Shown: one piece after another, positions 3,325 through 58,600 of the stretch
Position numbering within the stretch: the first letter of the stretch is position 1
Layout: each line of letters begins with the position of its first letter
Assembly: GCF_032444005.1 (NCBI RefSeq)
Contig: NC_091290.1
Span: 139,252,001 to 139,316,000 of the forward strand
DNA length: 64,000 nucleotides
Direction: 5' to 3'
Origin: Ranitomeya imitator
Lineage: Eukaryota
Notes under the pieces: generated by a model
Databases searched by the model: none
What the model was told of the DNA's origin: nothing
What the model saw: the letters and a program-made list of their open reading frames with translations, nothing else
Translations under genes and position numbers: made by a program

Positions 3325-4023
3325 ACTGTTATGAACAGGTGATTCAGAACCACAATGGACCTGGTGAATACGAGCACAGAAAATGACCTGATAGTTGCTA
3401 AACACATAGGACGAGCTCTGAGATGTGGGAACTCTGCTGACCGCAATCCCTAATCCTATCACACCACACTAGAGGTAGCCGTGGAGCGCTCCTGACCAGA
3501 CCTAGGCACCTCGGGCACAGCCTGAGAAACTAGCTAGCCCTGAAGATAGAAAAATAAGCCTACCTTGCCTCAGAGAAATTCCCCAAAGGAAAAGGCAGCC
3601 CCCACATATAATGACTGTGAGTAAAGATGAAAATACAAACACAGAGATTAAATAGATTTTAGCAAAGTGAGGCCCGACTTACTGAATAGACCGAGGATAG
3701 GAAAGATAGCTTTGCGGTCAGCACAAAAACCTACAAACAACCACGCAGAGGGCTGTTGTGGATTCTGTTTTTGGGCTCCCTCTGGTGGTTACAGATGTAC
3801 TGGGTGACTTGTGTTCTCTGCGGTCTCTGGTGTCCACCTGTTCTATCAGGATATGGGAGTTTCCTATTTAACCTGGCTTGCTTGTCATTTCCTCGCCGGC
3901 GATCAATGTAATCAGTGTGTCTTGTTACCTCTGCTTTCCGCTTCTGTAATCTTTTGTAATTCGGGGTTTCATCCTCGTTTTTCCTCTGGTCAGGTGGAAC
4001 CTTCTGATTGTCCTGGAGTGGAC

Positions 4024-4656
4024 ATGGTGGTGGATAGGTTGCATCAGATTTGGAGTCATGTGGTGGACAATTTGAAGTTGTCCCAGGAGAGGGCTCAGCA
4101 GTTTGCTAATCGCCGTCGCCGCGTGGGTCCTCGACTTCGTGTTGGGGACTTGGTGTGGTTGTCTTCTCGTTTTGTTCCTATGAAGGTCTCTTCTCCTAAG
4201 TTCAAGCCTCGGTTCATCGGTCCCTATCGGATCTTGGAAATTCTTAACCCTGTGTCGTTTCGTTTGGATCTCCCGGCATCGTTTGCTATTCATAATGTGT
4301 TCCATCGGACGTTGTTGCGGAGGTATGAGGTACCTGTTGTTCCTTCGCTTGAGCCTCCTGCTCCGGTGCTGGTGGAGGGAGAATTGGAGTATGTTGTGGA
4401 GAAGATCTTGGATTCTCGTGTTTCCAGACGGAAACTTCAGTATTTGGTCAAGTGGAAGGGTTATGGTCAGGAGGATAATTCTTGGGTGGTTGCCTCTGAT
4501 GTTCCTGCTGCTGATTTGGTCCGTGCATTTCATAGGGCTCATCCTGGTCGCCCTGGTGGTTCTCGTGAGGGTTCGGTGACCCCTCCTCAAGGGGGGGGTA
4601 CTGTTGTGGATTCTGTTTTTGGGCTCCCTCTGGTGGTTACAGATGGTACTGGGTGA
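4024..4656 (+). CDS. Putative stand-alone integrase C-terminus plus chromodomain ORF (210 aa) in the deleted tandem unit
   Basis: gacATGg at 4024 is in frame with ORF 3811-4656 and encodes GPY and the chromodomain. Expression is unknown. Confidence 0.35.
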   Translation: MVVDRLHQIWSHVVDNLKLSQERAQQFANRRRRVGPRLRVGDLVWLSSRFVPMKVSSPKFKPRFIGPYRILEILNPVSFRLDLPASFAIHNVFHRTLLRRYEVPVVPSLEPPAPVLVEGELEYVVEKILDSRVSRRKLQYLVKWKGYGQEDNSWVVASDVPAADLVRAFHRAHPGRPGGSREGSVTPPQGGGTVVDSVFGLPLVVTDGTG

Positions 4657-8500: not shown

Positions 8501-9710
8501 GACGCACATTTCCATGGACTTTATTTCGGATCTCCCTGTCTCTCAAAAAATGTCCGTCATCTGGGTTGTGTGTGACCGCTTTTCTAAGATGGTTCATCTG
8601 GTCCCCCTGCCTAAGTTACCTTCCTCCTCTGAGTTGGTCCCTCTGTTTTTTCAGAACGTGGTTCGTTTGCATGGGATTCCGGAGAACATTGTTTCTGACA
8701 GGGGATCCCAGTTTGTGTCTAGATTTTGGCGGACGTTCTGTGCTAAGATGGGCATTGATTTGTCCTTTTCGTCTGCATTCCATCCTCAGACGAATGGCCA
8801 GACGGAACGAACTAATCAGACCTTGGAAACTTATTTAAGGTGTTTTGTTTCTGCTGATCAAGATGACTGGGTTACCTTTTTGCCGCTTGCCGAATTTGCC
8901 CTTAATAATCGGGCTAGTTCTGCTACCTTGGTTTCTCCTTTCTTTTGTAATTCGGGGTTTCATCCTCGTTTTTCCTCTGGTCAGGTGGAGCCTTCTGATT
9001 GTCCTGGAGTGGACATGGTGGTGGATAGGTTGCATCAGATTTGGAGTCATGTGGTGGACAATTTGAAGTTGTCCCAGGAGAGGGCTCAGCAGTTTGCTAA
9101 TCGCCGTCGCCGCGTGGGTCCTCGACTTCGTGTTGGGGACTTGGTGTGGTTGTCTTCTCGTTTTGTTCCTATGAAGGTCTCTTCTCCTAAGTTCAAGCCT
9201 CGGTTCATCGGTCCCTATCGGATCTTGGAAATTCTTAACCCTGTGTCGTTTCGTTTGGATCTCCCGGCATCGTTTGCTATTCATAATGTGTTCCATCGGA
9301 CGTTGTTGCGGAGGTATGAGGTACCTGTTGTTCCTTCGCTTGAGCCTCCTGCTCCGGTGCTGGTGGAGGGAGAATTGGAGTATGTTGTGGAGAAGATCTT
9401 GGATTCTCGTGTTTCCAGACGGAAACTTCAGTATTTGGTCAAGTGGAAGGGTTATGGTCAGGAGGATAATTCTTGGGTGGTTGCCTCTGATGTTCATGCT
9501 GCTGATTTGGTCCGTGCATTTCATAGGGCTCATCCTGGTCGCCCTGGTGGTTCTCGTGAGGGTTCGGTGACCCCTCCTCAAGGGGGGGTACTGTTGTGGA
9601 TTCTGTTTTTGGGCTCCCTCTGGTGGTTACAGATGGTACTGGGTGACTTGTGTTCTCTGCGGTCTCTGGTGTCCACCTGTTCTATCAGGATATGGGAGTT
9701 TCCTATTTAA
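5532..9710 (+). CDS. Gag-Pol polyprotein (gag, CCHC, protease, RT, RNase H, integrase, GPY/F, chromodomain) in a single open frame
   Basis: 1392 aa with CFYCGDSAHVISAC, VDSGA, RT (YLND variant), VDAS/TDHKNL/ADALSR, GHPG..C..C, MDF/SDRG/QTE, FIGPY and EYVVEKILDSR..YLVKWKGY. Confidence 0.95.
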   Translation: MDVQSLASSLNNLAAKVQNIQDFVVHAPMSEPRIPIPEFFSGDRSSFLNFRNNCKLFLSLKSRSSGDPAQQVKIVISFLRGDPQNWAFALAPGDPALLNVDAFFLALGLLYEEPNLEIQAEKALLALSQGQDEAEIYCQKFRKWSVLTQWNECALAARFRDGFSEAIKDVMVGFPAPTGLNESMTMAIQIDRRLRERKPVHHLAVSSEQAPETMQCDRIQSRSERQNYRRKNGLCFYCGDSAHVISACSKRTKKVDKSVAISTLQSKFILSVTLICSLSAISVDAYVDSGAALSLMDWSFANRCGFSLEPLEVPIPLKGIDSTPLAMNKPQYWTHVTMRMTPVHQEVIRFLVLYNLHDVLVLGLPWLQTHNPVLDWKTMSVLSWGCQGVHDDAPPISIASSTPSEVPVFLSDYRDVFEEPKLNSLPPHRDCDCAIDLIPGSKFPKGRLFNLSVPEHTAMRDYVKESLEKGHIRPSSSPLGASFFFVAKKDGSLRPCIDYRLLNKITVKYQYPLPLLTDLFARIKGAKWFTKIDLLGAYNLVRIKQGDEWKTAFNTPEGHFEYLVMPFGLSNAPSVFQSFMHDIFREYLDKFMIVYLNDVLVFSDDWESHVQQVRKVFQVLRANSLFVKGSKCLFGVQKISFLGYIFSPSTIEMDPVKVQAICDWTQPTSLKSLQKFLGFANFYRRFITNFSSVVKPLTDLTKKGADVADWSPAAVEAFQELKRRFSSAPVLRQPDVLLPFQVEVDASEIGAGAVLSQRSSDCSVMKPCAFFSRKFSPTERNYDVGNRELLAMKWAFEEWRHWLEGARHRVVVLTDHKNLIYLESAKRLNPRQARWSLFFSRFDFVVSYLPGSKNVKADALSRSFVPDSPGNSEPTGILRDGVILSAVFPDLRRALQEFQADKPDRCPPERLFVPDNWTSRVISEVHSSALAGHPGIFGTRDLVARSFWWPSLSRDVRFFVQSCEVCARAKPCCSRASGLLSPLPIPKRPWTHISMDFISDLPVSQKMSVIWVVCDRFSKMVHLVPLPKLPSSSELVPLFFQNVVRLHGIPENIVSDRGSQFVSRFWRTFCAKMGIDLSFSSAFHPQTNGQTERTNQTLETYLRCFVSADQDDWVTFLPLAEFALNNRASSATLVSPFFCNSGFHPRFSSGQVEPSDCPGVDMVVDRLHQIWSHVVDNLKLSQERAQQFANRRRRVGPRLRVGDLVWLSSRFVPMKVSSPKFKPRFIGPYRILEILNPVSFRLDLPASFAIHNVFHRTLLRRYEVPVVPSLEPPAPVLVEGELEYVVEKILDSRVSRRKLQYLVKWKGYGQEDNSWVVASDVHAADLVRAFHRAHPGRPGGSREGSVTPPQGGVLLWILFLGSLWWLQMVLGDLCSLRSLVSTCSIRIWEFPI

Positions 9711-13690: not shown

Positions 13691-14304
13691 ATGAGGGGGG
13701 GCAACACGTATGTCTTAATAGGATTTTGAATGCTACAAGGGCTAATACATCAGACCAACATGTAGGTTGGAGCCCAGGTCCAAATTTCATCTGAAGATAC
13801 CTGCCCTCGAAAATATATACTTTTAATAGCTCTCGGCTGGTTTATCTAATGTGCACACAAATGTACTGCATCAGCTTTTTTAACCTAATATGGGGTGACG
13901 ACATTCCCTTTAAATACAGAACCAATCACACCCACTCTTCACTATGCGATAACCTATCTCCAGTATGTGAATGATATGAAGGATTTCCACATTTTGCAGG
14001 ATAGGCTACAAGAAATCCTTTTGCACGTAAATTAGTTGCGCTGCTCATTATCTTGTTTATGTAAAACAAATGCAAATGCTGATGAATGAATTCTAGATAA
14101 TGGCACAGCACAGCGTGAACCCGCTCCTCTCCAGCAATGCAAAAACTGAAGTCACACGTCCTGAAGGCAGGTAGTATCCTGTTTTATTTCCACCATTTAG
14201 ATGCTGTGATTATTATGCCCACCTTATTTTATTTTTCTAATCAAAATCAGATAATGAAAAATACTTTTTTTTCTAGACTGTCTTTATTTGGTGATCTTAC
14301 ACGG

Positions 14305-14924
14305 GTCAGTCGTCCTGGTTCCTTTGCAGAGAAACAGCCCCAAAGCATGATGTTGCCACGCCCATGCTTCACAGTAGGTATGGTGTTCTTTGGATGCAAC
14401 TCAGCATTCTGTCTCCTCCAAACATGACAAGTTTTGTTTCTACCAAACAGTTCTACTTTGGTTTCATCAGACCACATGACATTCTCCCAATACTCTTCTG
14501 GATAATCCAAATACTGTCTAGCAATCTTCAGACGGGCCCGGACACGTACTGGCTTAAGCAGGGGGACACATTTGGCACTGCAGGATCTGAGTCCTTGGCG
14601 GCATAGTGTGTTACTGATTTTAGCCTTTGTTACGGTGGTCCCAGCTCTCTGCAGGTCATTCACTAGGTCCCCCCATGTGGTTCTGGGATTTTTGCTCACC
14701 GTTCTTGTGATCATGTTTACCCCACAGGGTGAGATCTTGCGTGAAGCCCCAGATCGAGGGGGATTATCAGTGGTATTGTATGCCTTCCATTTTCTTATTT
14801 TTGCTCCCGCAGTTGATTTCATCACACCAAGCTGCTTGCCAATTGCAGATTCAGTCTTCCCAGCATGGAGCAGGGCTACAATTTTGTTTCTGGTGTCCTT
14901 CGACAGCTCTTTGGTCTTCACCAT
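14305..14924 (-). pseudogene. Truncated Tc1 transposase (paired-like HTH plus first catalytic Asp)
   Basis: ORF 14247-14975; homology ends at EPGRL. Confidence 0.88.
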
Positions 14925-15008
14925 AGTGGAGTTTGGAGTGTGACTGTTTGAACTTGTTATCAGTATAACAGACACCTGTCCAAAACCTCAAACAGGAGCC
15001 ATTACTAC

Positions 15009-37052: not shown

Positions 37053-37270
37053 NNNNNNNNNNNNNNNNNNNNNNNNNNNNNNNNNNNNNNNNNNNNNNNN
37101 NNNNNNNNNNNNNNNNNNNNNNNNNNNNNNNNNNNNNNNNNNNNNNNNNNNNNNNNNNNNNNNNNNNNNNNNNNNNNNNNNNNNNNNNNNNNNNNNNNNN
37201 NNNNNNNNNNNNNNNNNNNNNNNNNNNNNNNNNNNNNNNNNNNNNNNNNNNNNNNNNNNNNNNNNNNNNN
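37053..37270. other. Assembly gap (218 N)
   Basis: N run. Confidence 1.
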
Positions 37271-38125: not shown

Positions 38126-41100
38126 GAATTGAGGGGTTACCACTGTTTAGGCACATCAGGGGTCTCCAAACGCAACATGGCGCCACCATTGATTCCAGCC
38201 AATCTCGTATTCAAAAAGTCAAATGGTGCTCCCTCACTTCCGAGCCCTGACGTGTGCCCAAACAGTGGTTTACCCCCACATATGGGGTACCAGCATACTC
38301 AGGACAAACTGCGCAACAATTACTGGGGTCCAATTTCTCCTGTTACCCTTGTGAATCAAAAAAAATGCTTGCTAAAACATAATTTTTGAGGAAAGAAAAA
38401 TGATTTATTATTTTCACGGCTCTGCGTTGTAAACGTCTGTGAAGCACTTGGGGGTTCAAAGTGCTCACCACATATCTAGATAAGTTCTTTGGGGGGTCTA
38501 GTTTCTAAAATGGGGTCACTTGTGGGGGTTTCTACTGTTTAGGCACACCAGGGGCTCTGCAAACGCAACGTGACACCCGCAGACCATTCCATCAAAGTCT
38601 GCATTTCAAAAGTCACTACTTCCCTTCTGAGCCCCGACGTGTGCCCAAACAGTGGTTTACCCCCACTCATGGGGTATCAGCGTACTCAGGAGAAACTGGA
38701 CAACAACTTTTGGGGTCCAATTTCTCCTGTAACCCTTGGGAAAATAAAAAATTCTGGGCTAAATAATTATTTTTGAGGAAAGAAAACGTATTTATTATTT
38801 TCACGGCTCTGCATTATAAACTTCTATGAAGCACTTGGGGGTTCAAAGTGCTCACCACACATCTAGATAAGTTCCTTTCGGGGTCTAGTTTCCAAAATGG
38901 GGTCACTTGTGGGGGGTTTCTACTGTTTAGGCACATCAGGGGCTCTGCAAACGCAACGTGACGCCCGCAGAGCATTCCATCAAAGTCTGCATTTCAAAAC
39001 GTCACTACTTCAATTCCAAGCCCCGGCATGTGCCCAAACAGTAGTTTACCCCCACATATGGGGTATCACCGTACTCAGGAGAAACTGGACAACAAATATT
39101 GGGGTCAAATTTCTCCTGTTACCCTTGGGAAAATTAAAAAATTCTGGGCTAAATAATTATTTTTGAGGAAAGAAAACGTATTTATTATTTTCACGGCTCT
39201 GCATTATAAACTTCTATGAAGCGCTTGGGGGTTCAAAGTGCTCACCACACATCTAGATAAGTTCCTTTCGGGGTCTAGTTTCCAAAATGCGGTCACTTGT
39301 GGGGGGTTTCTACTGTTAAGCCACATCAGGGGCTCTGCAAACGCAATGTGACGCCCACAGAGCATTCCATCAAAGTCTGCATTTCAAAACGTCACTACTT
39401 CACTTCCGAGCCTCGGCATGTGCCCAAACAGTGGTTTACCCCCACATATGGGGTATCAGCGTACTCAGGAGAAACTGGACAACAACTTTTGGGGTCAAAT
39501 TTCTCCTGTTACCCTTGGGAAAATAAAAAATTGCAGGCTAAAAGATCATTTTTGAGAAAATAATTTTTTTTTTTTTTTCATGGCTCTGCGTTATAAACTT
39601 CTGTGAAGCACTTGGGGGTTCAAAGTCCTCACCACACATCTAGATTAGTTCCTTTGGGGGTCTAGTTTCCAAAATGGTGTCATTTCTGGGGGATCTCCAA
39701 TGTTTAGGCACACAGGGGCTCTCCAAACGTGACATGGTGTCCGCTAATGATTGGAGCTAATTTTCCATTTAAAAAGCCAAATGGCGTGCCATCCCTTCCG
39801 AGCCCTGCCGTGCGCCCAAACAGTGGTTTACCCCCACATATGGGGTATCAGCGTACTCAGGACAAACAGGACAACAATATTTGGGGTCCAATTTCTCCTA
39901 TTATCCTTGGCAAAATAGGAAATTCCAGGCTAAAAAATAATTTTTGAGGAAAGAAAAATTATTTTTTATTTTCATGGCTCTGCGTTATAAACTTCTGTGA
40001 AGCACCTGGGGGTTTAAAGTGCTCAATATGCATCTAGATAAGTTCCTTGGGGCGTCTAGTTTCCAAAATGGGGTCACTTGTGGGGAAGCTCCAATGTTTA
40101 GGCACACAGGGGCTCTCCAAACGCGACATGGTGTCCGCTAACAATTGGAGCTAATTTTCCATTCAAAAAGTCAAATGGCGCGCCTTCCCTTCCGAGCCCT
40201 GCCGAGTGCCCAAACAGTGGTTTACCCCCACATATGAGGTATCGACGTACTCGGGAGAAATTGCCCAACAAATTTTATGATCCATTTTACCCTACTGCCC
40301 ATGTGAAAATGAAAAAATTGAGGCGAAAAGAATTTTTTTGTGAAAAAAAAGTACTTTTTCATTTTTACAGATCAATTTGTGAAGCACCTGAGGGTTTAAA
40401 GTGCTCACTAGGCATCTAAATAAGTTCCTTGGGGGGTCTAGTTTCCAAAATGGGGTCACTTGTGGGGGAGCGCCAATGTTTAGGCACACAGGAGCTATCC
40501 AAACGCGACATGGTGTCCGCTAACGATGGAAATAATTTTTCATTCAAAAAGTCAAATGGCACTCCTTCCCTTCCGAGCCTTACCATGTGCCCAAACAGTG
40601 GTTTACCCCCACATGTGAGGTATTGGTGTACTCAGGAGAAATTGCCCAACACATTTTAGGATCCATTTTATCCTGTTGCCCATGTGAAAATGAAAAAATT
40701 GAGGCTAAAATAATTTTTTTGTGAAAAAAAAGTACTTTTTCATTTTTACGGATTAATTTGTGAAGCACCTGGGGGTTCAAAGTGCTCACTATGCATCTAG
40801 ATAAGTTCCTTGGGGCGTCTAGTTTCCAAAATGGGGTCACTTGTGGGGGAGCTCCAATTTTTAGGCACACGGGGGCTCTCCAAACGTGACATGGTGTCCG
40901 CTAAAGAGTGGAGCCAATTTTTGATTCAAAAAGTCAAATGGCGCTCCTTCCCTTCCAAGCCCTGCCGTGCGCCCAAACAGTGGTTTACCCCCACATATGA
41001 GGTATAAGCGTACTCAGGACAAATTGGACAACAACTTTCGTGGTTCAGTTTCTCCTTTTACCATTGGGAAAATAAAAAAATTGTTGCTAAAAGATAATTT
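38125..41100. repeat. ~381-394-bp tandem array (7-8 units) inside piggyBac-like element 1
   Basis: TCTAGATAAG-like anchor at 38475, 38862, 39252, 39639, 40033, 40415 and 40796. Confidence 0.9.
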
Positions 41101-42136
41101 TTGTGACTAAAAAGTTAAATGTTCATGTTTTCCTTCCATGTTGCTTCTGCTGCTGTGAAGCACCTGAAGGGTTAATAAACTTCTTGAATGTGGTTTTGAG
41201 TACCTTGAGGGGTGCAGTTTTTAGAATGGTGTCACTTTTGGGTATTTTCAGCCATATAGACCCTTCAAACTGACTTCAAATGTGAGGTGGTCCCTAAAAA
41301 AAATGGTTTTGTAAATTTCGTTGTAAAAATGACAAATCGCTGGTCAAATTTTAACCCTTATAACTTCCTAACAAAAAAAAATTTTGTTTCCAAAATTGTG
41401 CTGATGTAAAGTAAACATGTGGGAAATGTTATTTATTAACTATTTTGTGTCACATATCTCTCTGGTTTAACAGAATAAAAATTCAAAATGTGAAAATTGC
41501 GAAATTTTCAATATTTTCGCCAAATTTCCGTTTTTATCACAAATAAACGCAGAATTTATTGACCTAAATTTACCACTAACATGAAGCCCAATATGTCACG
41601 AAAAAACAATCTCAGAACCGCTAGGATCCGTTGAAGCGTTCCTGAGTTATTACCTCATAAAGGGACACTGGTCAGAATTGCAAAAAATGGCAAGGTCTTT
41701 AAGGTCAAAATAGGCTGGGTCATGAAGGGGTTAAGGTTACTATCTAAGCTAAAGGATACTTCTTTAATATCTTCTTCATCACCTTGTTCACCTGGCTGCA
41801 GCCTGCCCTGACATTTGACTACTGACTGTTGTTGGAGATCTCCATCTGCCCTGACCTTGGCCTGACTTGCCTTCGCCCCGAAACTGGTATTCACCTTCCT
41901 GAACAGGCCAAATTTTACAAGTCTGACCAGTGTCACTTTATGTGGAAATAACTCTGGAACGCTTCAAGGAATCCCACTCATTCTGAGACTGTTTTTCGTG
42001 ACATATTGTATTTTATGTTAGGGGTAAATTTAAATCGAAATTTTTAATGTTTAATTGTGAAAATATAAAAATTTTAGCAAAAAGTGTGAAAATGTTGCTA
42101 TTTTCAAATTTTCATCTTTAATATCCTTAAACCAGT

Positions 42137-46900: not shown

Positions 46901-47628
46901 TATAATATATATATATATATATATATACATACACACAGCTATATGAAAAAGTGTGGGCACCCCTATTAATCTAGGAATCATATAGACCCAGAAAAAAATC
47001 TTTATTAAACTTGATTAAAAATGCCACCAACCTGTGGCTGCACCAAGAAAAAATATACAAAAAAACACAAAAACACCGTGAAAAAACTAGGGAGGGGAAA
47101 AAAAAAAAGACAAATCCCTAGAATATACCTAGGTCACGCCTACCTAACAGCGGGGGTTGGCACCCTATGGGGAAAGATGTGGCGCCCCCGCTCCGCGTCG
47201 GCTGAACCCTAGGGTCCCTGATAAACCCTAATGATCCCCAAAGGGTCCCTCTACCCACACAATGGTGTACTGAAGGTACCCCTCGAAGCTAGACATATAA
47301 CAACTATATCTAGGGAAGCCTCAAACCCCACACCTGTGAGTTAAAAACAATAAGAGAACATGCAGAGGGCTATTGACAGTCGCATGTTGCCACCCTCACG
47401 TATGATGTGTGACCTATGTGGCAACAAATACACACATTTGCGCAGATGATACTGCCTGTGCTTCAATCAAACCTGTGGGGGGCATGCCACTGCAAAACTC
47501 CACCCCACCATAACAAATGCAGATGAACATATCATGCCTCATGCCCCAAAATCCATTGACAAATACAGGCATATATATATAGCGATACTCATCATAACAT
47601 TCTGCGCCGTCAGCCCACTGTTCCTAAT

Positions 47629-47668
47629 AGCGTCAACGCGTTTCGCCTAGCTGGCTCATCAGGAGGCC
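47629..47668 (-). ncRNA. Minimal type I hammerhead ribozyme (left arm)
   Basis: GGCCTC-CTGATGA-GCC AGCTA GGC-GAAA-CGCGT-T-GACGCT. Confidence 0.75.
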
Positions 47669-48229
47669 CGATTTCTTATCATGTGTCTCGATGGTGCAAA
47701 GATGTCTAAAGGGTTCTGATGAATATTACCTCAGTTTTAAACAAAGTCCGCCGGAAAACCGCGCCACCCTCCACTTCCTGTGTAGATCCGGAAGCAGAAT
47801 GGATGCTCGGCTCTGATTGGTGAAGCAGGGAACTGTCTCTACGGTTGCGCACCATGGACCGCAATATGCGTGTCACCTCGTACCAAATACTGGCAATAAG
47901 TGTATCGTCACCTGCGCCTGCGCTCCCATGAGGGGCGCAATCCTGATTGGTGGACCGGGAAAAACATTGCTGCAGTTACGCAGCTCGTACATACCAGTTT
48001 GAGCTCTGATCGAGAGTGGGTGTATACAATGGCAAAAAACACCGCCCTTTTGCCTTGCTGCGGCTGCTTAGGTGCGCGCAGCCGCAGCAAGGCAAAAGGG
48101 CCTCTTCCGGATCTACACAGGAAGTGGAGGGTGGCGCGGTTTTCCGGCGGACTTTGTTTAAAACTGAGGTAATATTCATCAGAACCCTTTAGACATCTTT
48201 GCACCATCGAGACACATAATAAGAAATCG

Positions 48230-48269
48230 GGCCTCCTGATGAGCCAGCGAGGCGAAACGCGTTGACGCT
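48230..48269 (+). ncRNA. Minimal type I hammerhead ribozyme (right arm)
   Basis: GGCCTC-CTGATGA-GCC AGCGA GGC-GAAA-CGCGT-T-GACGCT. Confidence 0.75.
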
Positions 48270-50446
48270 ATTAGGAACAGTGGGCTGACGGCGCAGAATG
48301 TTATGATGAGTATCGCTATATATATATGCCTGTATTTGTCAATGGATTTTGGGGCATGAGGCATGATATGTTCATCTACATTTGTTATGGTGGGGTGGAG
48401 TTTTGCAGTGGCATGCCCCCCACAGGTTTGATTGAAGCACAGGCAGTATCATCTGCGCAAGTGTGTGTATTTGTTGCCACATAGGTCACACATCATACGT
48501 GAGGGTGGCAACATGCGACTGTCAATAGCCCTCTGCATGTTCTCTTACTGTTTTTAACTCACAGGTGTGGGGTTTGAGGCTTCCCTAGATATAGTTGTTA
48601 TATGTCTAGCTTCGAGGGGTACCTTCAGTACACCATTGTGTGGGTAGAGGGACCCTTTGGGGATCATTAGGGTTTATCAGGGACCCTAGGGTTCAGCCGA
48701 CGCGGAGCGGGGGCGCCACATCGTTCCCCATAGGGTGCCAACCCCCGCTGTTAGGTAGGCGTGACCTAGGTATATTCTAGGGATTTGTCTTTTTTTTTCC
48801 CCTCCCTAGTTTTTTCACGGTGTTTTTGTGTTTTTTTGTATATTTTTTCTTGGTGCAGCCACAGGTTGGTGGCATTTTTAATCAAGTTTAATAAAGATTT
48901 TTTTCTGGGTCTATATGATTCCTATATTGATAGAAGCCCATTTACATATATTTTTTTGAGAATTTATGCACCCCTATTAATCTTAACCCCTTTCTGCCAT
49001 TAGACGTACTATTCCGTCCATGTGGGGTGGGCCCTACTTCCCAAGGACGGAATAGTACGTCATAGGCGATCGGCCGCGCTCACGGGGGGAGCGCGGCCGA
49101 TCGCGGCCGGGTGTCAGCTGCTTATCGCAGCTGACATCCGGCACTATGTGCCAGGAGCGGTTACGGACCGCCCCCGGCACATTAACCCCCAGCACACCGC
49201 GATCAAACATGATCGCGATGTGCCGGCGGTGCAGGGAAGCATCGCGCAGGGAGGGGGATCCCTGCGGGCTTCCCTGAGAACCCCGCAGCAACGCGATGTG
49301 ATTGCGTTGCTCCGGGGGTCTCCTACCTTCCTCCCTGCAGCAAATCCCGGATCCAAGATGGCCGCGGATCCGGGTCCTGCAGGGAGGGAGGTGGCTTACC
49401 AAGTGCCTGCTCAGAGCAGGCACTTGGTAACGCTGCAGCGCTCTGAGACAGATCAGTAATCTGCCAGAGTGCTGTGCAAACTGGCAGATCACCGATCTGT
49501 ATTGTCCCCCCCTGGGACAAAGTAAAAAAAGTTTTTAAAAAAATTTACAAGTGTGTAAAAAAAAAAAAAATCCTAAATAATGAAAAAAAATATATATTAT
49601 TCCCATAAATACATTTCTTTATCTAAATAAAAAAACAAACAATAAAAGTGCACATATTTAGTATCGCCGTGTCCGTAACGACCCGAACTATAAAACTGTC
49701 CCACTAGTTTACCCCTTCAGTAAACACCGTAAGAAAAAAAAAAAAAAACGAGGCAAAAAAACAACGCTTTATTATCATACCGCCGAACAAAAAGTGGAAT
49801 AACACGCGATCAAAAAGACGGATATAAATAACCATGGTACTGCTGAAAGCGTCATCTTGTCCCGCAAAAAACGAGCCGCCATACAGCAACATCAGCAAAA
49901 AAATAAAAAAGTTATAGTCCTCAGAATAAAGCGATGCAAAAATAATTATTTTTTCTATAAAATAGTTTTTATCGTATAAAAGCGCCAAAACATTAAAAAA
50001 ATGATATAAATGAGGTGTCGCTGTAATCGTACTGACCCGAAGAATAAAACTGCTTTACCAATTTTACCAAACGCGGAACGGTATAAACGCCTCCCCCAAA
50101 AGAAACTCATGAATAGCTGGTTTTTGGTAATTCTGCCTCACAATAATCGGAATAAAAAGCGATCAAAAAATGTCACGTGCCCGAAAATGTTACCAATAAA
50201 AACGTCAACTCGTCCCGCAAAAAACAAGACCTCACATGACTCTGTGGACTCAAATATGGAAAAATTATAGCTCTCAAAATGTGGTAACGCAAAAAATATT
50301 TTTTGCAATAAAAAGCGTCTTTCAGTGTGTGACGGCTGCCAATCATAAAAACCCGCTATAAAAGTAAATCAAACCCCCCTTCATCACCCCCTTAGTTAGG
50401 GAAAAATAAAAAAATTAAAAAAATGTATTTATTTCCATTTTCCCAT

Positions 50447-50910
50447 TAGGGTTAGGGCTAGGGTTAGGGCTAGGGTTAGGGTTACGGNNNNNNNNNNNNN
50501 NNNNNNNNNNNNNNNNNNNNNNNNNNNNNNNNNNNNNNNNNNNNNNNNNNNNNNNNNNNNNNNNNNNNNNNNNNNNNNNNNNNNNNNNNNNNNNNNNNNN
50601 NNNNNNNNNNNNNNNNNNNNNNNNNNNNNNNNNNNNNNNNNNNNNNNNNNNNNNNNNNNNNNNNNNNNNNNNNNNNNNNNNNNNNNNNNNNNNNNNNNNN
50701 NNTTGGGACTAGGGTTATGGTTAGGGCTAGGGTTAAGGCTAAAGTTAGGGTTAAGGCTACAGTTAGGGTTGGGGCTAAAGTTAGGGTTAGGGTTTGGATT
50801 ACATTTGCGGTTGGGAATAGGGTTGGGATTAGGGTTAGGGGTGTGTCTGGGTTAGATGTGTGGTTAGGGTTACCGTTGGAATTGGGGTTAGGGGTGTGTT
50901 TGGATTAGGG
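50447..50910 (+). repeat. (TTAGGG)n-like array spanning an assembly gap (N 50488-50702)
   Basis: TTAGGG/CTAGGG units on both sides of the gap. Confidence 0.85.
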
Positions 50911-52740
50911 TTTCAGTTATAATTGGGGGTTTCCACTGTTTAGACACATCAGGGGCTCTCCAAACGCGACATGGCGTCCGATCTCAATTCCAGCCAATTC
51001 TGCGTTGAAAAAGTAAAACAGTGCTCCTTCCATTCCGAGCTCTCCCGTGTGCCCAAACAGGGGTTTACCCCAACATATGGGGTATCAGCGTACTCAGGAC
51101 AAATTGGACAACAACTTTTGGGGTCCAATTCCTCCTGTTACCCTTGGGAAAATACAAAACTGGGGGCTAAAAAATAATTTTTGTGGGAAAAAAATTTTTT
51201 TTTATTTTCACAGCTCTGCGTTATAAACTGTAGTGAAACACTTGGGGGGTCAAAGTTCTCACAACACATCTAGATAAGTTCGTTGGGGGGGTCTAGTTTC
51301 CAATATGGGGTCACTTGTGGGGGGTTTCTACTGTTTAGGTACATTAGGGGCTCTGCAAACGCAATGTGACGCCTGCAGACCATTCCATCTAAGTCTGTAT
51401 TCCAAATGGCGCTCCTTCCCTTCCGAGCCCTCCCATGTGCCCAAACGGTGGTTCCCCCCCACATATGGGGTATCAGCGCACTCAGGACAAATTGCACAAC
51501 AACTTTTGGGGTCCAATTTCTCCTGTTACCCTCGGGAAAATACAAAACTGGGGGCTAAAAAATAATTTTTGTGGGAAAAAAATTTTGTTTTATTTTTACG
51601 GCTCTGCATTATAAACTTCTGTGAAGCTCTTGGTGGGTCAAAGTGCTCACCACACATCTAGATAAGTTCCTTAGGGGGTCTACTTTCCAAAATGGTGTCA
51701 CTTGTGGGGGGTTTCAATGTTTAGGCACATCAGTGGCTCTCCAAACGCAACATGGCATCCCATCTCAATTCCTGTGAATTTTGCATTGAAAAGTCAAACG
51801 GCGCTCCTTCCCTTCCAAGCTCTCCCATGCGCCCAAACAGTGGTTTACCCCCACATATGGGGTATCAGCGTACTCAGGACAAATTGTACAACAACTTTTT
51901 GGTTCCAATTTCTTCTCTTACCATTGGGAAAATAAAAAATTGGGGGCGAAAAGATAATTTTTGTGAAAAAAAAAATGATTTTTTATTTTTACGGTTCTGC
52001 ATTATAAACTTCTGTGAAGCACTTGGTTGGTCAAAGTGCTCACCACACCTCTAGATAAGATCCTTAGGGGGTCTACTTTCCAAAATGGTGTCACTTGTGG
52101 GGGGTTTCAATGTTTAGGCACATCAGTGGCTCTTCAAACGCAACATGGCGTCGCATCTCAATTCCTGTCAATTTTGCATTGAAAGGTCAAACGGCGCTCC
52201 TTCCCTTCCGAACTCTCCCATGTGCCCAAACAGTGTTTTACCCCCACATATGGGGTATCAGAGTACTCAGGACAAATTGTGAAACAACTTTTTGGTTCCA
52301 ATTTCTTCTCTTACCATTGGGAAAATAAAAAATTGGGGGGCGAAAAGATAATTTTTGTGAAAAAAAAATGATTTTTTATTTTTACGGTTCTGTTTATAAA
52401 CTTCTGTGAAGCACATGGTGGGTTAAAGTACTCACCACACCTCTAGATAAGTTCCTTAGGGGGTCTACTTTCCAAAATGGTGTCACTTGTGGGGGGTTTC
52501 AATGTTTAGGCACATCAGTGGCTCTCCAAACGCAACATGGCGTCCCATCTCAATTCTCGCTTCCAAGCTCTGTTATGCGCCCAAACAGTGGTTTACCTCC
52601 ACATATGGGGTATCGGCGTACTCAGGACAAATTGTACAACAAGGTTTGGGGTCCATTTTCTCCTGTAACCCTTGGTAAAATAAAACAAATTGGAGCTGAA
52701 GTAAATTTTTTGTGAAAAAAAGTTAAATGTTAATTTTTAT
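50910..52740. repeat. ~390-bp tandem array (4-5 units), same family as 38125-41100
   Basis: TCTAGATAAG anchor at 51269, 51657, 52050 and 52442. Confidence 0.9.
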
Positions 52741-52924
52741 TTATAGTGGATGCTTTCCTGAAACGGAAAGTACTTGCAAGCAGCATAATACAAAGAATAG
52801 CAGGTTTACCCAGAATCCTTTGCAGTAGGCGGAGCTATGCAAATCATCTCTTTCCACCCCAGTCTAATCCACAGCGCTTGGAACCGCCAAGCGTGCAATG
52901 CTGCGGATTAGTTTCTAAATTTAC

Positions 52925-53005
52925 ACAGCCAACCAATTCCTACCTGTGGACACGTGTTTCGGGCTTTAGGCCCTCATCAGCACAGGGCTGGAATTGGTTG
53001 GCTGT
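52925..53005 (-). ncRNA. Extended type I hammerhead ribozyme with an intact core and GUC cleavage site at 52949
   Basis: ACAGCCAACCAATTCC-AGC-CCTGTG-CTGATGA-GGGC CTAAA GCCC-GAA-ACACGTGT-C-CACAGG-TA-GGAATTGGTTGGCTGT. Confidence 0.92.
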
Positions 53006-53050
53006 ATGGAGTGGGGCTCGATGAGCAAGCGATACATATGTGCTAGCCAC

Positions 53051-53228
53051 CTTAGGGAGAGACCCAAGTTGGGCTAAATGTAGTGGGACGAAAGAGACCG
53101 AAAAGCCCTCTACTTAAAGGAAATACATAGTGGATGCTTTCCTGAAATGGAAAGTACTTGCAAGCAGCATAATACAAAGAATAGCAGGTTTACCCAGAAT
53201 CCTTTGCAGTAGGCGGAGCTATGCAAAT
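53051..53228 (-). promoter_or_regulatory. Putative snRNA-type promoter (octamer plus GC box DSE; PSE-like motif)
   Basis: ATGCAAAT at 53221-53228 next to AGGCGG; CTCTCCCTAAG (minus) at 53051-53061. Confidence 0.5.
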
Positions 53229-54592
53229 CATCTCTTTCCACCCCAGTCTAATCCACAGCGCTTGGAACCGCCAAGCGTGCAATGCTGCGGATAAGTTTCT
53301 AAATTTACACAGCCAACCAATTCACACGTGTTCACAGGTAGGAATTGGTTGGCTGTGTAAATTTAGAAACTAATCCGCAGCATTGCACGCTTGGCGGTTC
53401 CAAGCGCTGTGGATTAGACTGGGGTGGAAAGAGATGATTTGCATAGCTCCGCCTACTGCAAAGGATTCTGGGTAAACCTGCTATTCTTTTTATTATGCTG
53501 CTTGCAAGTACTTTCCGTTTCAGGAAAGCATCCACTATGTATTTCCTTTAAGTAGAGGGTTTTTCGGTCTCTTTCGTCCCGCTACATTTAGCCCAACTTG
53601 GGTCTCTCCCTAAGGTGGCTAGCACATATGTAATTTTTATTTAAACATTCCAAAAATTCCTGTGAAACACCTGAAGGGTTAATAAACTTCTTGAATGTGG
53701 TTTTGAGAACCTTGAGGGGTGCAGTTTTTAGAATGATGTCACACTTGGGTATTTTCTATCGTATAAACCCCTCAAAATGACTTCAAATGAGATGTGGTCC
53801 CTAAAATAAAATGGTGTTGTAAAAATGAGAAATTGCTGGTCAACTTTTAATCCTTATAACTCCCTAACAAAAAAAAATTTTGGTTGCAAAATTGTGCTGA
53901 TGTAAAGTAGAAATGTGGGAAATGTTACTTATTAAGTATTTTGTGTGATATAGCTCTGTGATTTAATTGCATAAAAATTCAAAGTTGGAAAATTGCAAAA
54001 TTTTCAAAATTTTCACCATATTTCCGTTTTTTTTTCACTAATAAACGCAGGTAATATCAAATAAATTTTTACCACTACCATGAAGTACAATATGTCACGA
54101 GAAAACAATGTCAGAATCACCGGGATCCGTTGAAGCGTTCCAGAGTTATAACCTCATAAAGGGACAGTGGTCAGAATTGTAAAAATTGGCCCGGTCCATA
54201 ACGTGCAAACCACCCTTGGGGGTAAAGGGGTTAAGCTTAATGTTTTATAAAAATTGTTTTTTTGCAACAGCTATTTCAGTTTCATATATCTAATAACTGT
54301 TGGACACAGTAATGTTTCTGCCTTGAAATGAGGTTTATTGTACTAACGGAAAATGTGCAATCTGCATTCAAACAAAATTTGACAGGTGCATAAGTATGGG
54401 CACCCTTATCATTTTCTTGTTTTAAATACCCCTACCTACTTTTTACTGACTTACTAAAGCACTTTTTTTGGTTTTCTAACCTCATTGAGCTTTGAACTTC
54501 ATAGCCAGGTGTATGCAATCATGAGGAAAGCTACTTAAAGTGGTCACTTGCAAGTTGTTCTCCTGTTTGAATCTCCTCTGAAGAGTGGCATC

Positions 54593-55614
54593 ATGGGCTC
54601 CTCAAAACAACTGTCTAATGATCTGAAAACAAAGATTATTCAACATAGTTGTTCAGGGGAAGGATACAAAAAGCTGTCTCAGAGATTTAACATGTCAATT
54701 TCCACTGTGAGGAGCATAGTAAGGAAATGGAAGAACACAGGTACAGTTCTTGTTAAGGCCAGAAGTGGCAGGCCATGAAAAACATCAGAAAGGCAGAGAA
54801 GAAGAATGGTGAGATCAGTCAAGGACAATCCTCAGACCACCTCCAGAGAGCTGCAGCATCAACTTGCTGCAGATGGTGCCACTGTGCATCGGTCAACTAT
54901 ACAACGCACTTTGCACAAGGAGAAGCTGTATGGGAGAGTGATGCGAAAGAAGCCGTTTCTGCAAGCACACCACAAACAGAGTCGGCTGAGATATGCAAAA
55001 GCACATTTGGAGAAGCCAATTTCTTTTTGGAAGAAGGTCCTGTGGACTGATGAAACCAAGATTGAGTTGTTTGGTCATACAAAAAGGCGTTATGTATGGC
55101 GGCAAAAAAAACACAGCATTCCAAGAAAAACACTTGCTACCCACAGTAAAATTTGGTGGAGTTTCCATCATGCTTTGGGGCTGTGTGGCCAATGCAGGCA
55201 CCGGGAATCTTGTTAAAGTTGAGGGACGCATGGATTCCTCTCAGTATAAGCAGATTCTTGACAATAATGTTCATGAATCAGTGACAAAGTTGAAGTTACG
55301 CAGGGGATGGATCTTTCAGCAAGACAATGATCCAAAACACTGCTCCAAATCTACTCACGCATTCATGCAGAGGAACAATTACACTATTCTGGAATGGCCA
55401 TCCCAGTCCCCAGACCTGAATATCATTGAACATCTGTGGGATAATTTGAAGAGGGCTGTCCATGCTCGGCGACCATCAAACTTAACTGAACTGGAATTGT
55501 TTTGTAAAGAGGAATTTTCAAAAATACCTTCATCCAGGATCCAGGAACTAATTAAAAGCTACAGGAAGCGACTAGAGGCTGTTATTTTTGCAAAAGGAGG
55601 ATCTACTAAATATG
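54593..55614 (+). pseudogene. Tc1 DD34E transposase with one premature stop and one frameshift
   Basis: MGSSKQLSNDLK..; TGA at 54776-54778; frameshift in the A-run near 55110; TDET, QQDN-x34-E. Confidence 0.93.
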
Positions 55615-58600
55615 AATGTCACTTTTCTGGTGGGGTGCCCATACTTATGCACCTGTCAAATTTTGTTTGAATTCAGATTGCACATTTTCTGTTAGTACAA
55701 TAAACCTCATTTCAAGGCAGAAACATTACTGTGTCCAATAGTTATTAGATATATGAAACTGAAATAGCTGTTGCAAAAAAAACCCCAATTTTTATAAAAC
55801 ATTAAGCTTAAGATTAATAGGGGTGCCCAAACTTTTTCATATAACTGTATATACATGTGTGTGTGTATGTGTAGCTTTGTCACCTTAAAAGGAGGGGGGC
55901 CCAGACACATTTACTGCACAGGGGCCCCAAGCTGTCTGTGTCCGCCACTGAGCTATTGTATACATATTCCTTTTACATTCATGTTGTGTCCATATAAATG
56001 CCGTATTCCAGAGCACTTGACGCTAATCCACCATGCCGGATGCTGACAAGAGCTTCTGTTTCCATTCAGGTAAACACTGTAAACTAAATAACCCGGAGGC
56101 ATGTTCTGCATCATCTGACTGGCGGCATTATAGCTGGAGCGGACAGAAACGCAGACTGAATGAGATAATGGGCGGAGAGGGAGCTGTTATTGTGTATGCA
56201 GATGGTTTAGAGTATGTATATACTATATATATATATGCAAAAAAATACAGCAGCCTTTATAAGTGCTAAAATGTCTGCAAAGATTGAAGACATTTGAATG
56301 CATTGCGGTTATACAGAATACTCTTGTACAATGAGCGTATTTAGCACACAAATTGGTCAATTCATGAAAGCCCATCAGCCATAACAAGGCGACCTTTCGC
56401 TGATTGGACCCTAAATACAATATTTATCACGTTAAGCTTTTAGCTTGGGCGAGGCATGTTTAATACAGTATATATTAACTTTACAATCCCATCAAAGAAA
56501 GGTACGCCTAGTCATGGCTGGTGGGCTCTCATAAATTGGGCAATTTTTGCTCTAAGTATATTATATACGGTAGTATTGCTCTCCAAATGTCAAATATTAC
56601 ATGTTTGCAGACATCTTAGCACTTATAGAAATTGTTCTATTCTATTGTTTGAGGGTTATGCAGTCATAGCAGCTTGCACCTGTTCACACCTGCATTAATG
56701 TGTTGTGAAGTGCTGGTCATTTTTTTGTGCTTTTATATGTTTTATATATGCACGCATCGTAACTTTGCAAAAAGTTTAATAAGTTCAAATAGATCACTTA
56801 AAAACAATGAAATATATATTTGGGGGGAGAAGAGGGTGCATGGAAACGGTGTAGGGACCAGGACTCTCACATCACACAGAGTCTTTCAATTGGTTTTTTG
56901 GTTATGAGCACATGGAGTTTTTCCAGAAACTTAAGGTAATCTTTCCAAATACTCCTCCAAATCTCAAAACTCCTCCAAACTTGAAGTTTCAGCTCAGTGA
57001 CTGTGTGCACATGGAATCTAGTGTAAACTGAGCAGACTTTTGTGTTTGAGAAGTTCTGCAGTTTTTAGAAGAATTTGGAGAGTTTCTTCTCAATTTCTGG
57101 TTAGGTTCTGTTCTAAAACTCTGTGTGCATATAGCTAAATTCCACTCCAAAACTAAACACAAAAGACCCTATTAATGATTGATTTTCAGCCATTATTGGA
57201 GTAAATCCTCTCCATAAAAACTATAAAAAATGGTTATGTTACATCCAATGAGGTCACTATGTCACTAGTGGATGGTTTTTGATAAAATCATAACTAAGCG
57301 CCTGAGGCTTTTTTTTTTTGGCGTTAGTTTTACACTATAGGATTTCTGGTCTTGTCCTATATTTTAATCAGTTTGTTAATACAAACTGTACCCTGCAGCC
57401 ATGAAAATCTAATTTATGAAGAGTTTGCAGTTATTGGGATTCTTATTTTTTTGCAGCCAAATACATTTTATAATTTTTTTTTTTAAACAATTTCTCATAA
57501 GGAAAATCCACAGGAGTGGAGACCGATCCGAAACAAAACATGAACAGATCAATTTTGCTCTTTTTGCTTCCTTTAATGCTAATTAGGAAAACTGCCAAAC
57601 ACTGTAACTTCTGCTGACGCGGTTTGGTCAATCAGAGCTGCGGATCTCTTACTTTCCTACATTTGATCCAGGTATAACACTGCCAGGAAGGACATTAAGA
57701 TGATAACTTCTGCTATACTTAAAGGGAACCTGCTACCGTGATCTCTGATTGTTTAATCGTTTTTTTTTACCTATGTATTCGGTTACGGCCAGCTTCAGAC
57801 GAGGGTATTTTACGTATATCAGATAGCATACGGATAAAATATGGACTAATGATATTCAATAGGACTGTTCAGATAAACGTTTCATTACTCAGTTGTAACG
57901 TGCACTAACCTCTTCCGTTTTTTTGGGATATTTGGACGAGCAAAAAAATGGATGCCATGTGGATCATACGTATTACATCCATTTTATGCATTTTTTTTTC
58001 CTTGTATTTTTATTAACTGCTTATGCATAAAAACGGATGTAAAAAATGGACACATGGATGAAATAGAGGCGATAATATGGATACAAATTTTCCATTTATT
58101 TCTCTATGAAAAACAGCGATTCTTCATATATGATCGGCTGAACCTGCCCATACTCCTAAAACCCTCTGTTTGACATATAGAAGATATGTGCCAAGTACCA
58201 TTGCCTAATCCAACGAAACGTATGTTAACGCAGTTGATGGAAGTTTTTACAAGACGCCACCATGCTTCATCACGCTTCGATAGAAACCAATGGTGACTGT
58301 AAAGTTACTGGGACATTTTTTGTTCACGTCGTCCTCTGGGGTCAGACATCAGTCATTTCATTCCAGTGCCATGACAGAAAAGTTTGGGGCTAAAATGTAA
58401 TTTTGAGTAGCGTTCCTCCATTTACACTTATCTACGGAGACCATATCAGCCAATATTCAGTGTCCTCTAGGTGCTTTTGGGTTAGGAGGTGTTTCCATTC
58501 CGGGAGCGAGAAGGAATAGCATACACAACCTCTGGGCAGGTGGAGACAACCATGTAATCTCTCATCTGTCGTATTACACTCGGACCTAAAATATTCTTGT

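What the first reader, a model, noticed from the sequence alone, without database searches (positions are those of the whole stretch)
52744..53630. Satellite-2/retrozyme-like mobile RNA unit with an intact extended hammerhead in a frog-like genome
Seen: a 384-bp non-coding unit in partial tandem with a 13-bp AT-rich TSD. The type I hammerhead is canonical: CUGAUGA, 4-bp helix II, GAAA, palindromic helix III ACACGUGU, GUC site at 52949. Helix I is 6 bp, extended through an internal loop by a perfect 16-bp stem. Established: newt satellite 2 and metazoan non-LTR retrozymes are 150-400-bp tandem hammerhead units processed to monomeric or circular RNAs, and salamander hammerheads have internally looped helix I extensions. 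Inference: an anuran counterpart, recently retrotransposed, probably by a Penelope-type RT. I cannot confirm whether it has been described.
Basis: partly seen in the sequence, partly recalled or inferred. Interest (0 to 1): 0.9.

Follow-up and report, generated by a model that had tools for sequence, protein, structure and literature searches.

The report
Frog hammerhead retrozyme insertion, dead copy
This is one young, TSD-flanked insertion of a small non-coding mobile element that carries a self-cleaving hammerhead ribozyme, a kind of element already described in frogs and salamanders and very common in this genome, so it is a clean example and not a new thing.

Summary
Window 52744-53630 is an 887-bp non-coding insert between perfect 13-bp duplications of TAATTTTTATTTA. 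A paralogous empty site supports this. It has a 384-bp unit and, on the minus strand, a complete type I hammerhead: CUGAUGA, 4-bp helix II, GAAA, palindromic ACACGUGU, GUC with C17 at 52949, 6-bp helix I and a 16-bp extension. It is not a simple partial tandem. It is 1.5 direct units followed by a roughly 300-nt inverted arm, and the arms meet inside the hammerhead. Only one complete ribozyme is present, so this locus cannot release monomers. That layout, partial tandem plus adjacent inverted copy at an AT-rich target, is the published signature of Penelope-like element insertions. No Penelope RT lies in the window, so the mobilising enzyme is inferred. A public small-RNA library contains a contig in which the Illumina 5' adapter is joined exactly to the base after the predicted cleavage site. 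Head-to-tail 384-nt joints occur in two other runs. Non-LTR retrozymes are already described in amphibians (Cervera and de la Peña 2020), including 57 Xenopus families (Li et al. 2026). This scan's unchecked notes mention hammerheads 222 times in this genome. Verdict: real, correctly interpreted, known kind, low novelty.

The parts
52731..52743 (.). Left copy of the 13-bp target-site duplication TAATTTTTATTTA
   Evidence: Read directly. It is identical to 53631-53643. The paralogous empty site 41042-41235 has single-copy length.
52744..53127 (-). Complete 384-bp unit (copy 1). The ribozyme-sense RNA is the minus strand.
   Evidence: Direct repeat spacing of 384. Head-to-tail joints 'goes back 384/382' in runs X12 and X19.
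52925..53005 (-). The only complete type I hammerhead. The 16-bp helix I extension is 52925-52940 / 52990-53005 and helix I is 52943-52948 / 52980-52985. The core runs from CUGAUGA (52980-52974) to GUC (52951-52949). The scissile bond lies between 52949 and 52948.
   Evidence: I3; HH9 30.1 bits, full model; dimer forms an 8-bp helix III; 1 match against 0.03 expected. In one search the small-RNA 5' adapter is joined to 52948.
53128..53323 (-). Partial copy 2 (unit positions 189-384 in ribozyme sense). It ends 10 nt short of the cleavage site and has no catalytic core.
53324..53341 (+). Asymmetric 18-nt centre between the inverted arms: ACACGTGT-T-CACAGG-TAG. This is ribozyme-sense positions 171-188, spanning the scissile bond, with C17 changed to U.
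   Evidence: Read directly. There is no microhomology at the 53323/53324 joint.
53324..53630 (+). Inverted arm. The ribozyme-sense strand is on the plus strand. It covers unit positions 171-384 and then 1-93 (up to 95 if the 2 nt shared with the TSD are counted).
   Evidence: I1: 299 nt, 97% complementary; I2: 215 nt, 99%; 98.7% to copy 1.
53631..53643 (.). Right copy of the 13-bp target-site duplication
41042..41235 (+). Paralogous uninterrupted ('empty') version of the target site in a duplicated copy of the flanking repeat
   Evidence: the empty-site model, positions 7-199, aligns contiguously at 82%. One search confirms this.

Best explanation
This is a dead-end insertion of a 384-nt non-autonomous, hammerhead-bearing retroelement. 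That means a metazoan non-LTR retrozyme, the frog equivalent of newt satellite 2 and the axolotl retrozymes. It was made by target-primed reverse transcription of the Penelope-like type.

Proposed sequence of events:
1. A tandem source array elsewhere is transcribed on the ribozyme-sense strand.
2. Hammerheads of neighbouring units or molecules pair through the palindrome ACACGUGU into a double hammerhead. They cut after GUC to give 384-nt RNAs, which a tRNA ligase can circularise.
3. A PLE RT/GIY-YIG enzyme supplied in trans makes cuts staggered by 13 bp in an AT-rich target. It extends both DNA ends on retrozyme RNA.
4. One cDNA covers 1.5 units, so its template was multimeric or circular. 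The other covers 0.8 unit.
5. The two cDNAs were joined head to head inside the hammerhead.

What is shown: the anatomy, the TSD and empty site, the intact ribozyme core, an RNA 5' end at the predicted cleavage site, and head-to-tail junctions in other datasets. What is inferred: the identity of the RT, the twin priming, and circular RNA.

Because only one complete ribozyme survives here, this locus cannot yield monomers by double cleavage.
For: Anatomy of the insert:
- Direct repeat with 384 spacing plus 299-nt inverted arms.
- TSD and paralogous empty site.
- Non-coding.

Ribozyme:
- Full-length match to the Rfam HH9 architecture, E 3e-6 locally.
- Core motif found once against 0.03 expected.
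- Fold z = -7.1.
- The dimer forms the 8-bp intermolecular helix III: -95.3 against 2 x -42.3 kcal/mol.
- This matches the published 'canonical' metazoan type I design: helix I 6 bp, helix II 4 bp, short palindromic helix III, active as a dimer (PMC4209133; PMC7229834).

RNA evidence:
- Run X20 carries Illumina small-RNA 5' adapter sequence in its loose ends. I recognise the adapter from my own knowledge.
- One contig reads adapter...GATC directly followed by CACAGGUAGG on the minus strand. That places an RNA 5' end at 52948, the first base after C17.
- The RNA starts with C, not the U typical of piRNAs.
- X12 and X19 hold head-to-tail joints of 384 and 382+2 nt.
- No variant appears in the hammerhead region in any of the 4 runs.

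PLE link:
- Partial tandem plus adjacent inverted 5'-truncated copy is the described PLE insertion structure (PMC8557442).
- A purified PLE enzyme cleaves and extends both strands, prefers AT-rich 5'-ATT-3' and starts RT internally at two sites (PMC11167929).
- Here both outer ends fall in a UAUGUAU heptamer, 95 nt apart (p about 0.02).
- Contigs of other family copies in X17 and X20 break into unrelated flank at 53031 and 53041, the same end as the inverted arm.

Age: about 0.7% private substitutions.
Against: - No PLE RT or GIY-YIG ORF is in the window. Only Ty3/gypsy and Tc1/mariner ORFs were identified.
- The Rfam score is below every hammerhead family's gathering threshold.
- The adapter junction is a single Logan contig from an unknown family copy.
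- Standard small-RNA ligation needs a 5' phosphate, whereas hammerhead products carry 5'-OH. A kinase step has to be assumed.
- The other RNA runs are only guessed to be RNA.
- Neither arm ends exactly at the scissile bond. One stops 10 nt short and the other runs 9 nt past.
- Circular RNA was not and could not be shown from contigs.
- No sequence comparison with Repbase, Dfam, newt or axolotl units was possible.
Confidence: 0.8

Rival explanations
1. The insert is a heavily 5'-truncated copy of an autonomous Penelope-like element. The 384-bp unit would be that element's pseudo-LTR or 3' end, not an independent retrozyme family.
For: Li et al. 2026 find that 24 of 57 Xenopus retrozyme families match PLE termini. 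Most PLE insertions are 5'-truncated and keep one terminal repeat. The direct/inverted layout is the PLE layout.
Against: The left arm contains a unit-to-unit head-to-tail junction (53127|53128) with a 384-nt period and no ORF sequence between. The same 384-nt junction is present in two independent public runs. In a PLE the tandem period is the whole 3-4-kb element.
Confidence: 0.1
2. The structure arose at the DNA level. A piece of a hammerhead satellite, for example extrachromosomal circular DNA or break-repair filler, was captured at a double-strand break. The inverted arm would come from fold-back repair, with no reverse transcription involved.
For: Retrozyme units do form satellite-like arrays. 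Palindromic junctions can arise by fold-back repair. The junction at 53323/53324 shows no microhomology.
Against: A perfect 13-bp TSD with an empty paralogous site indicates staggered endonuclease cuts. The inverted arm's outer end coincides with a terminus used by other family copies. Scan notes report the same layout with 13-16-bp TSDs in many unrelated hammerhead elements of this genome (unchecked), and one more is present in this window.
Confidence: 0.06
3. The hammerhead is a decayed or chance motif, or the palindrome is an assembly artefact, with no biological activity.
For: The Rfam score is below gathering. In Li et al. 2026, eight of the nine Xenopus retrozyme dimers tested did not cleave in vitro.
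Against: All core positions are intact and both helices are complementary. The motif is expected 0.03 times per window. The adapter-joined RNA 5' end lies exactly at the site. The arms differ at several positions and the centre is asymmetric, unlike a chimeric-read palindrome.
Confidence: 0.04

Closest known systems
Metazoan non-LTR retrozymes (Cervera and de la Peña 2020, PMC7229834), including the vertebrate and Xenopus families of Li, Clavereau and Pollet 2026 (bioRxiv 10.64898/2026.07.22.740005)
   Same: A 150-450-bp non-coding unit in head-to-tail copies. A type I hammerhead that needs a dimer. TSDs longer than 4 bp. No LTR. Proposed PLE mobilisation. Amphibian average consensus length of 316 bp.
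   Different: This locus holds 1.5 direct units plus an inverted arm and only one complete ribozyme. By Li et al.'s definition (a hammerhead in every repeat) it is not an 'active' retrozyme. I could not check whether this 384-bp family is one of the catalogued ones, such as REP4_XT.
Newt satellite 2 and axolotl Rtz_331/Rtz_353 repeats
   Same: An amphibian tandem unit of about 330-350 bp, an extended type I hammerhead with an internal loop in helix I, a very weak palindromic helix III, and dimer-dependent cleavage.
   Different: The helix I extension here is a perfect 16-bp stem, and helix III is 2 bp with a 4-nt loop. The unit is 384 bp. Sequence homology was not tested because no reference sequence was available to the tools.
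Rfam Hammerhead_HH9 (RF02275), the intronic amniote hammerhead
   Same: It is the best Rfam match and aligns over the whole model: 6-bp helix I, internal loop, further stem, CUGAUGAG, 4-bp helix II with an A-rich loop, CGAAAC and GUC.
   Different: It scores 30.1 bits against a gathering score of 52. Helix III is shorter, and the genomic context is a mobile repeat, not a conserved intron. It is not a member of that orthologous family.
Penelope-like element insertions (Craig et al. 2021, PMC8557442; Frangieh et al. 2024, PMC11167929)
   Same: Partial tandem plus adjacent inverted truncated copy, a hammerhead in the repeat, an AT-rich target containing ATT, a TSD of variable length, and two alternative RT start sites.
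   Different: There is no RT/GIY-YIG ORF, so the element is non-autonomous. The two apparent start sites are 95 nt apart, not the 30-40-nt 'tail'.

Membership tests
Type I hammerhead ribozyme | Conserved core C3-U-G-A-N-G-A9, G12-A-A14, A15.1-U16.1 and H17 | tested here: met
   CUGAUGA, GAAA and GUC are all present and correctly spaced.
Type I hammerhead ribozyme | Helices I and II complementary, helix I open-ended, G10.1-C11.1 pair | tested here: met
   Helix I is 6 bp plus a 16-bp extension. Helix II is GGGC/GCCC.
Type I hammerhead ribozyme | Reaches the Rfam gathering score of a hammerhead family | tested here: not met
   There are no hits at gathering. The best is HH9 at 30.1 bits against 52. 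The shortfall lies in the short helix III and the long helix I.
Type I hammerhead ribozyme | Self-cleavage 3' of H17 | tested here: inconclusive
   One small-RNA-library contig joins the 5' adapter to 52948, exactly the 3' product. This is a single contig with no biochemical assay.
Metazoan non-LTR retrozyme | Short non-coding unit (150-450 bp) in head-to-tail repeats | tested here: met
   The unit is 384 bp, with 1.53 direct units here. 384-nt head-to-tail joints occur in X12 and X19. No ORF is present.
Metazoan non-LTR retrozyme | A type I hammerhead in each repeat unit (Li et al.'s 'active' definition) | tested here: not met
   Only copy 1 has the core. Copy 2 and the inverted arm are truncated at the ribozyme. 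This locus is an inactive copy of the family.
Metazoan non-LTR retrozyme | TSD longer than the 4 bp of LTR retrozymes, and no LTRs | tested here: met
   The TSD is 13 bp. The termini are not direct LTRs.
Metazoan non-LTR retrozyme | Unit-length linear and circular RNAs in tissues | not testable with these tools
   Only contigs were available. Head-to-tail joints cannot tell circles from tandems.
Penelope-like element (autonomous) | ORF with a telomerase-like RT and a GIY-YIG endonuclease | tested here: not met
   There is no ORF in the insert. The Pfam-scanned window ORFs are Ty3/gypsy and Tc1/mariner.
Penelope-like element (insertion signature) | Partial tandem with an adjacent inverted truncated copy, and an AT-rich target | tested here: met
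   (D1, I1, I2). The target is TAATTTTTATTTA. Compared with PMC8557442 and PMC11167929.
Newt satellite 2 | Sequence homology to the caudate satellite 2 unit | not tested
   No reference sequence is reachable with the tools. Only the architecture was compared, through the literature.

The most novel reading that the evidence does not exclude
The inner junction of this insertion may be a footprint of how the ribozyme takes part in transposition. Two cDNAs are primed from the two cut target strands. Both end inside the hammerhead, one 10 nt short of the scissile bond and one 9 nt past it, and they meet at the helix III palindrome.

This would be expected in two cases. The templates could be ribozyme-processed RNAs. 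Or the template could be an RNA dimer held by the ACACGUGU helix III and copied by a dimeric PLE enzyme, with a later small deletion stabilising the palindrome.

If the pattern recurs across families, as unchecked scan notes suggest, it would give the hammerhead a role in shaping PLE-type inverted structures. Frangieh et al. 2024 could not see such a role in vitro.
Probability: 0.2. Interest if true: 0.6.

Novelty: new member of a known kind. Interest (0 to 1): 0.22.

Why it matters
As a kind it adds nothing. Hammerhead retrozymes and their PLE link are published for amphibians, frogs included, and this genome is full of them.

Its modest value is as a well-preserved single insertion event. 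It has exact TSDs and an empty paralogous site. Both outer ends fall in the same heptamer, and the inner junction lies inside the ribozyme. A public small-RNA read-out of the predicted cleavage site also exists. Frangieh et al. 2024 reported failing to find such reads for an anole PLE.

A census of such young copies could test whether ribozyme cleavage or helix III dimerisation shapes PLE-type insertions.

Tried and rejected
- Rfam at gathering thresholds over the whole window gave nothing. Only the permissive local search recovered the HH9-like match. The strong miRNA-family hits there (MIR7533, mir-876) merely reflect the long inverted repeat and were discarded.
- Exact-match scans of the metagenome and prokaryote genome collections for the 32-nt ribozyme core found nothing, as expected for a vertebrate repeat.
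No family-level comparison was possible.
- A literature search for HH9 plus Xenopus returned nothing relevant.
- The bacterial promoter/terminator scan is irrelevant here and found nothing above chance.
- A snap-back (self-primed) origin of the inverted arm was considered. The primer end shows no complementarity to the required site, and other family copies share the arm's outer terminus. I rank it below twin priming but cannot exclude it.
- A MITE or foldback DNA transposon was rejected because the two termini of the insert are not inverted repeats of each other.
- Depth profiles from contigs (table 2) look like 5'-truncation gradients from the two ends. The tool warns that contig depth cannot rank parts of a stretch, so I did not rely on them.
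- Species identity was not established, because the run organisms are coded.

Full report
**What is in the sequence**

The stretch 52744-53630 is an 887-bp insert bounded by two perfect copies of TAATTTTTATTTA, at 52731-52743 and 53631-53643.

The flanks belong to a repeated region that occurs again around 38-41 kb of the window. A model of the empty site (left flank plus right flank with one TSD copy) aligns without interruption to 41042-41235 at 82% identity. Between conserved anchors, the paralogue has 30 nt where the filled site has 29 nt once one TSD copy is counted. The insertion and its 13-bp duplication are therefore real.

**Internal layout of the insert**

- A direct repeat with 384-bp spacing: 52743-52955 and 53127-53339.
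- A large inverted repeat: arms 53033-53331 and 53334-53632, 299 nt, 97% complementary. A second pair, 52743-52957 and 53324-53538, is 99% complementary.

Read on the ribozyme-sense strand, the parts are:
- Unit copy 1 (52744-53127, minus strand).
- Partial copy 2 (53128-53323, minus strand; unit positions 189-384).
- An inverted arm (53324-53630, plus strand; unit positions 171-384, then 1 to about 95).

No ORF of note is present.

**The ribozyme**

On the minus strand of copy 1, the sequence reads as follows:
- A 16-bp stem strand, AGC, then CCUGUG.
- CUGAUGA, GGGC-CUAAA-GCCC, GAAA, ACACGUGU, then C.
- The cleavage position.
- CACAGG, UA, and the other 16-bp stem strand.

All core positions are present. 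The 16-bp stem is perfect (I3).

Supporting numbers:
- The linear core pattern occurs once in the window against 0.03 expected.
- No Rfam family reaches its gathering score.
- A permissive local search aligns the full Hammerhead_HH9 model at 30.1 bits (gathering 52, E 3e-6) with the same topology.
- The 93-nt region folds at -45.5 kcal/mol, z = -7.1.

As a monomer, helix III is only 2 bp with a 4-nt loop and is not predicted to form. Two copies form an 8-bp intermolecular ACACGUGU helix, at -95.3 against 2 x -42.3 kcal/mol. This is the 'canonical' metazoan type I design that works as a dimer: helix I 6 bp, helix II 4 bp, short palindromic helix III (PMC4209133; PMC7229834).

Copy 2 and the inverted arm both stop at the ribozyme and lack the catalytic core. 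The locus therefore holds one hammerhead and cannot release a monomer by double cleavage.

**Evidence from public runs**

The unit is held nearly intact by 20 listed runs from 9 studies under several coded organism labels. Laying contigs of four runs on the unit gave four useful results.

1. Run X20 has loose ends that are the Illumina small-RNA 5' adapter. I recognise this adapter from my own knowledge, so X20 is a small-RNA library. It holds contigs on both strands.
2. One X20 contig reads, on the minus strand, adapter...CGATC followed directly by CACAGGUAGG.
   - The last two adapter letters happen to match 52950-52949, so the RNA 5' end is 52948. That is the first base after the predicted scissile bond.
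   - Only two adapter junctions are among the loose ends listed (four more were not shown). The chance that one hits that position and strand is of the order of 0.3%.
   - The RNA starts with C, not the U typical of piRNAs.
   - Caveats: it is a single contig from an unknown family copy, and ligation requires a 5' phosphate, which the ribozyme product lacks.
3. X12 and X19 contain head-to-tail joints of 384 and 382+2 nt. The 384-nt period therefore exists elsewhere, as tandem DNA, multimeric RNA or circles. Contigs cannot tell which.
4. Contigs in X17 and X20 leave the family sequence for unrelated flank at 53031 and 53041. These lie within a few bases of 53033, the point in copy 1 that corresponds to the inverted arm's outer end at 53632.

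No variant was reported in the hammerhead region in any run. The window copy differs from the majority at 4-5 positions. Two of these, 53039 and 53040, are shared by the inverted arm, so they are lineage markers and not post-insertion changes.

**Age**

Comparing the three segments gives about six private substitutions in about 880 nt (about 0.7%). Two of them are CpG transitions. The TSD is intact. The insertion is young but not brand-new.

**How it was probably made**

The window has no Penelope RT. The long ORFs that matched a Pfam family are Ty3/gypsy pol and Tc1/mariner transposase. The link to PLEs is structural.

- Craig et al. describe PLE insertions as partial tandems. An inverted 5'-truncated copy often lies immediately adjacent, giving inverted-repeat structures, and the hammerhead sits in the pseudo-LTR (PMC8557442).
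- Frangieh et al. show that a purified PLE enzyme cleaves and extends both target strands. It prefers AT-rich 5'-ATT-3' sites. It starts reverse transcription internally, at two sites that are not homologous to the target (PMC11167929).

The features here fit those descriptions:
- The target is AT-rich and contains ATT.
- The ribozyme-sense strands of the two arms point outward, as expected if each cut strand primed a cDNA.
- Both outer ends fall within a UAUGUAU heptamer of the unit, 95 nt apart. About 2% of random position pairs in the unit are this similar.
- The left cDNA spans 1.5 units, so its template was multimeric or circular, or the RT jumped between monomers.

The inner joint (53323|53324) has no microhomology. 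One arm stops 10 nt short of the scissile bond. The other runs 9 nt past it, through the palindrome, with C17 read as U.

A joint this close to the cleavage site has a chance of roughly 5-10%. It may be a footprint of ribozyme-processed or helix-III-paired templates, perhaps followed by a small stabilising deletion. It may equally be coincidence or an RT stop at the very stable helix I hairpin.

The second hammerhead element in this window has its inner arm ends about 165 nt from its ribozymes. The pattern is therefore not universal. Unchecked scan notes claim several more cases beside hammerheads.

**Comparison with what is known**

- Cervera and de la Peña (2020) defined metazoan non-LTR retrozymes. 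These are 150-450-bp tandem units with type I hammerheads and TSDs longer than 4 bp. [quoted passage not shown] The axolotl and other amphibians need dimeric ribozymes.
- Cervera and de la Peña (2014) counted about 9,000 minimal hammerheads in Xenopus tropicalis.
- Li, Clavereau and Pollet (2026) found non-LTR retrozymes in all seven amphibian genomes they sampled. They defined 57 Xenopus families and tied them phylogenetically to PLE pseudo-LTRs. One REP4 dimer cleaved in vitro, while eight other elements did not.
- This scan's own notes mention hammerheads 222 times in this genome. Several titles describe the same TSD-plus-inverted-arm layout (unchecked).

The element is therefore an ordinary member of a described kind. 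I could not test whether this exact 384-bp family is already catalogued.

**Verdict**

Novelty is low. The points of some interest are the adapter-mapped RNA end at the cleavage site and the junction inside the ribozyme. Both need a family-wide census and raw reads to mean anything.

Noticed in passing
window 46973-48967: A second, sequence-unrelated hammerhead-bearing insertion. Inverted arms are 47050-47794 / 48104-48848 (745 nt, 97%), with outer parts 46963-47106 / 48790-48933, and a 309-nt unique centre holding a 24-bp perfect hairpin. Hammerhead cores with CUGAUGA at 47662 (-) and 48236 (+) point outward. A 16-bp direct repeat GCACCCCTATTAATCT flanks the element at 46957-46972 and 48968-48983. 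The inner arm ends lie about 165 nt from the ribozymes.
   Followed up: partly
window 52837-52844, 53221-53228, 53437-53444: A perfect octamer ATGCAAAT (Oct-1 or snRNA distal-element type) occurs once in every copy of the unit. Four further occurrences lie in the rest of the 64 kb, about the chance level. From memory, newt satellite 2 is reported to use an snRNA-type promoter. I did not test this here beyond counting.
   Followed up: partly
window 51001-52556 and 38237-41404: A 393-bp tandem repeat (4 copies, 89% matches) ends about 190 bp upstream of the insertion. It has a paralogous array and matching right flank near 38-41 kb. That paralogue provided the empty-site comparison.
   Followed up: partly
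window 1399-3246 (-), 3811-4653 (+), 5532-9707 (+), 14250-14975 (-), 54993-55667 (+): The window is rich in transposable elements. There is a full Ty3/gypsy polyprotein with a chromodomain (1392 aa) and fragments of others. There are also Tc1/mariner (Sleeping Beauty-like HTH) and DDE_3 transposase remnants. No Penelope RT or GIY-YIG was found.
   Followed up: partly
window 52744-53127, laid on run X20: Small-RNA contigs map to both strands of the unit at high word depth. This suggests the family is a target or source of small RNAs (piRNA or siRNA type). The contigs give no size or phasing information.
   Followed up: no
window 37053-37270 and 50488-50702: Two runs of N (218 and 215 bases).
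   Followed up: no
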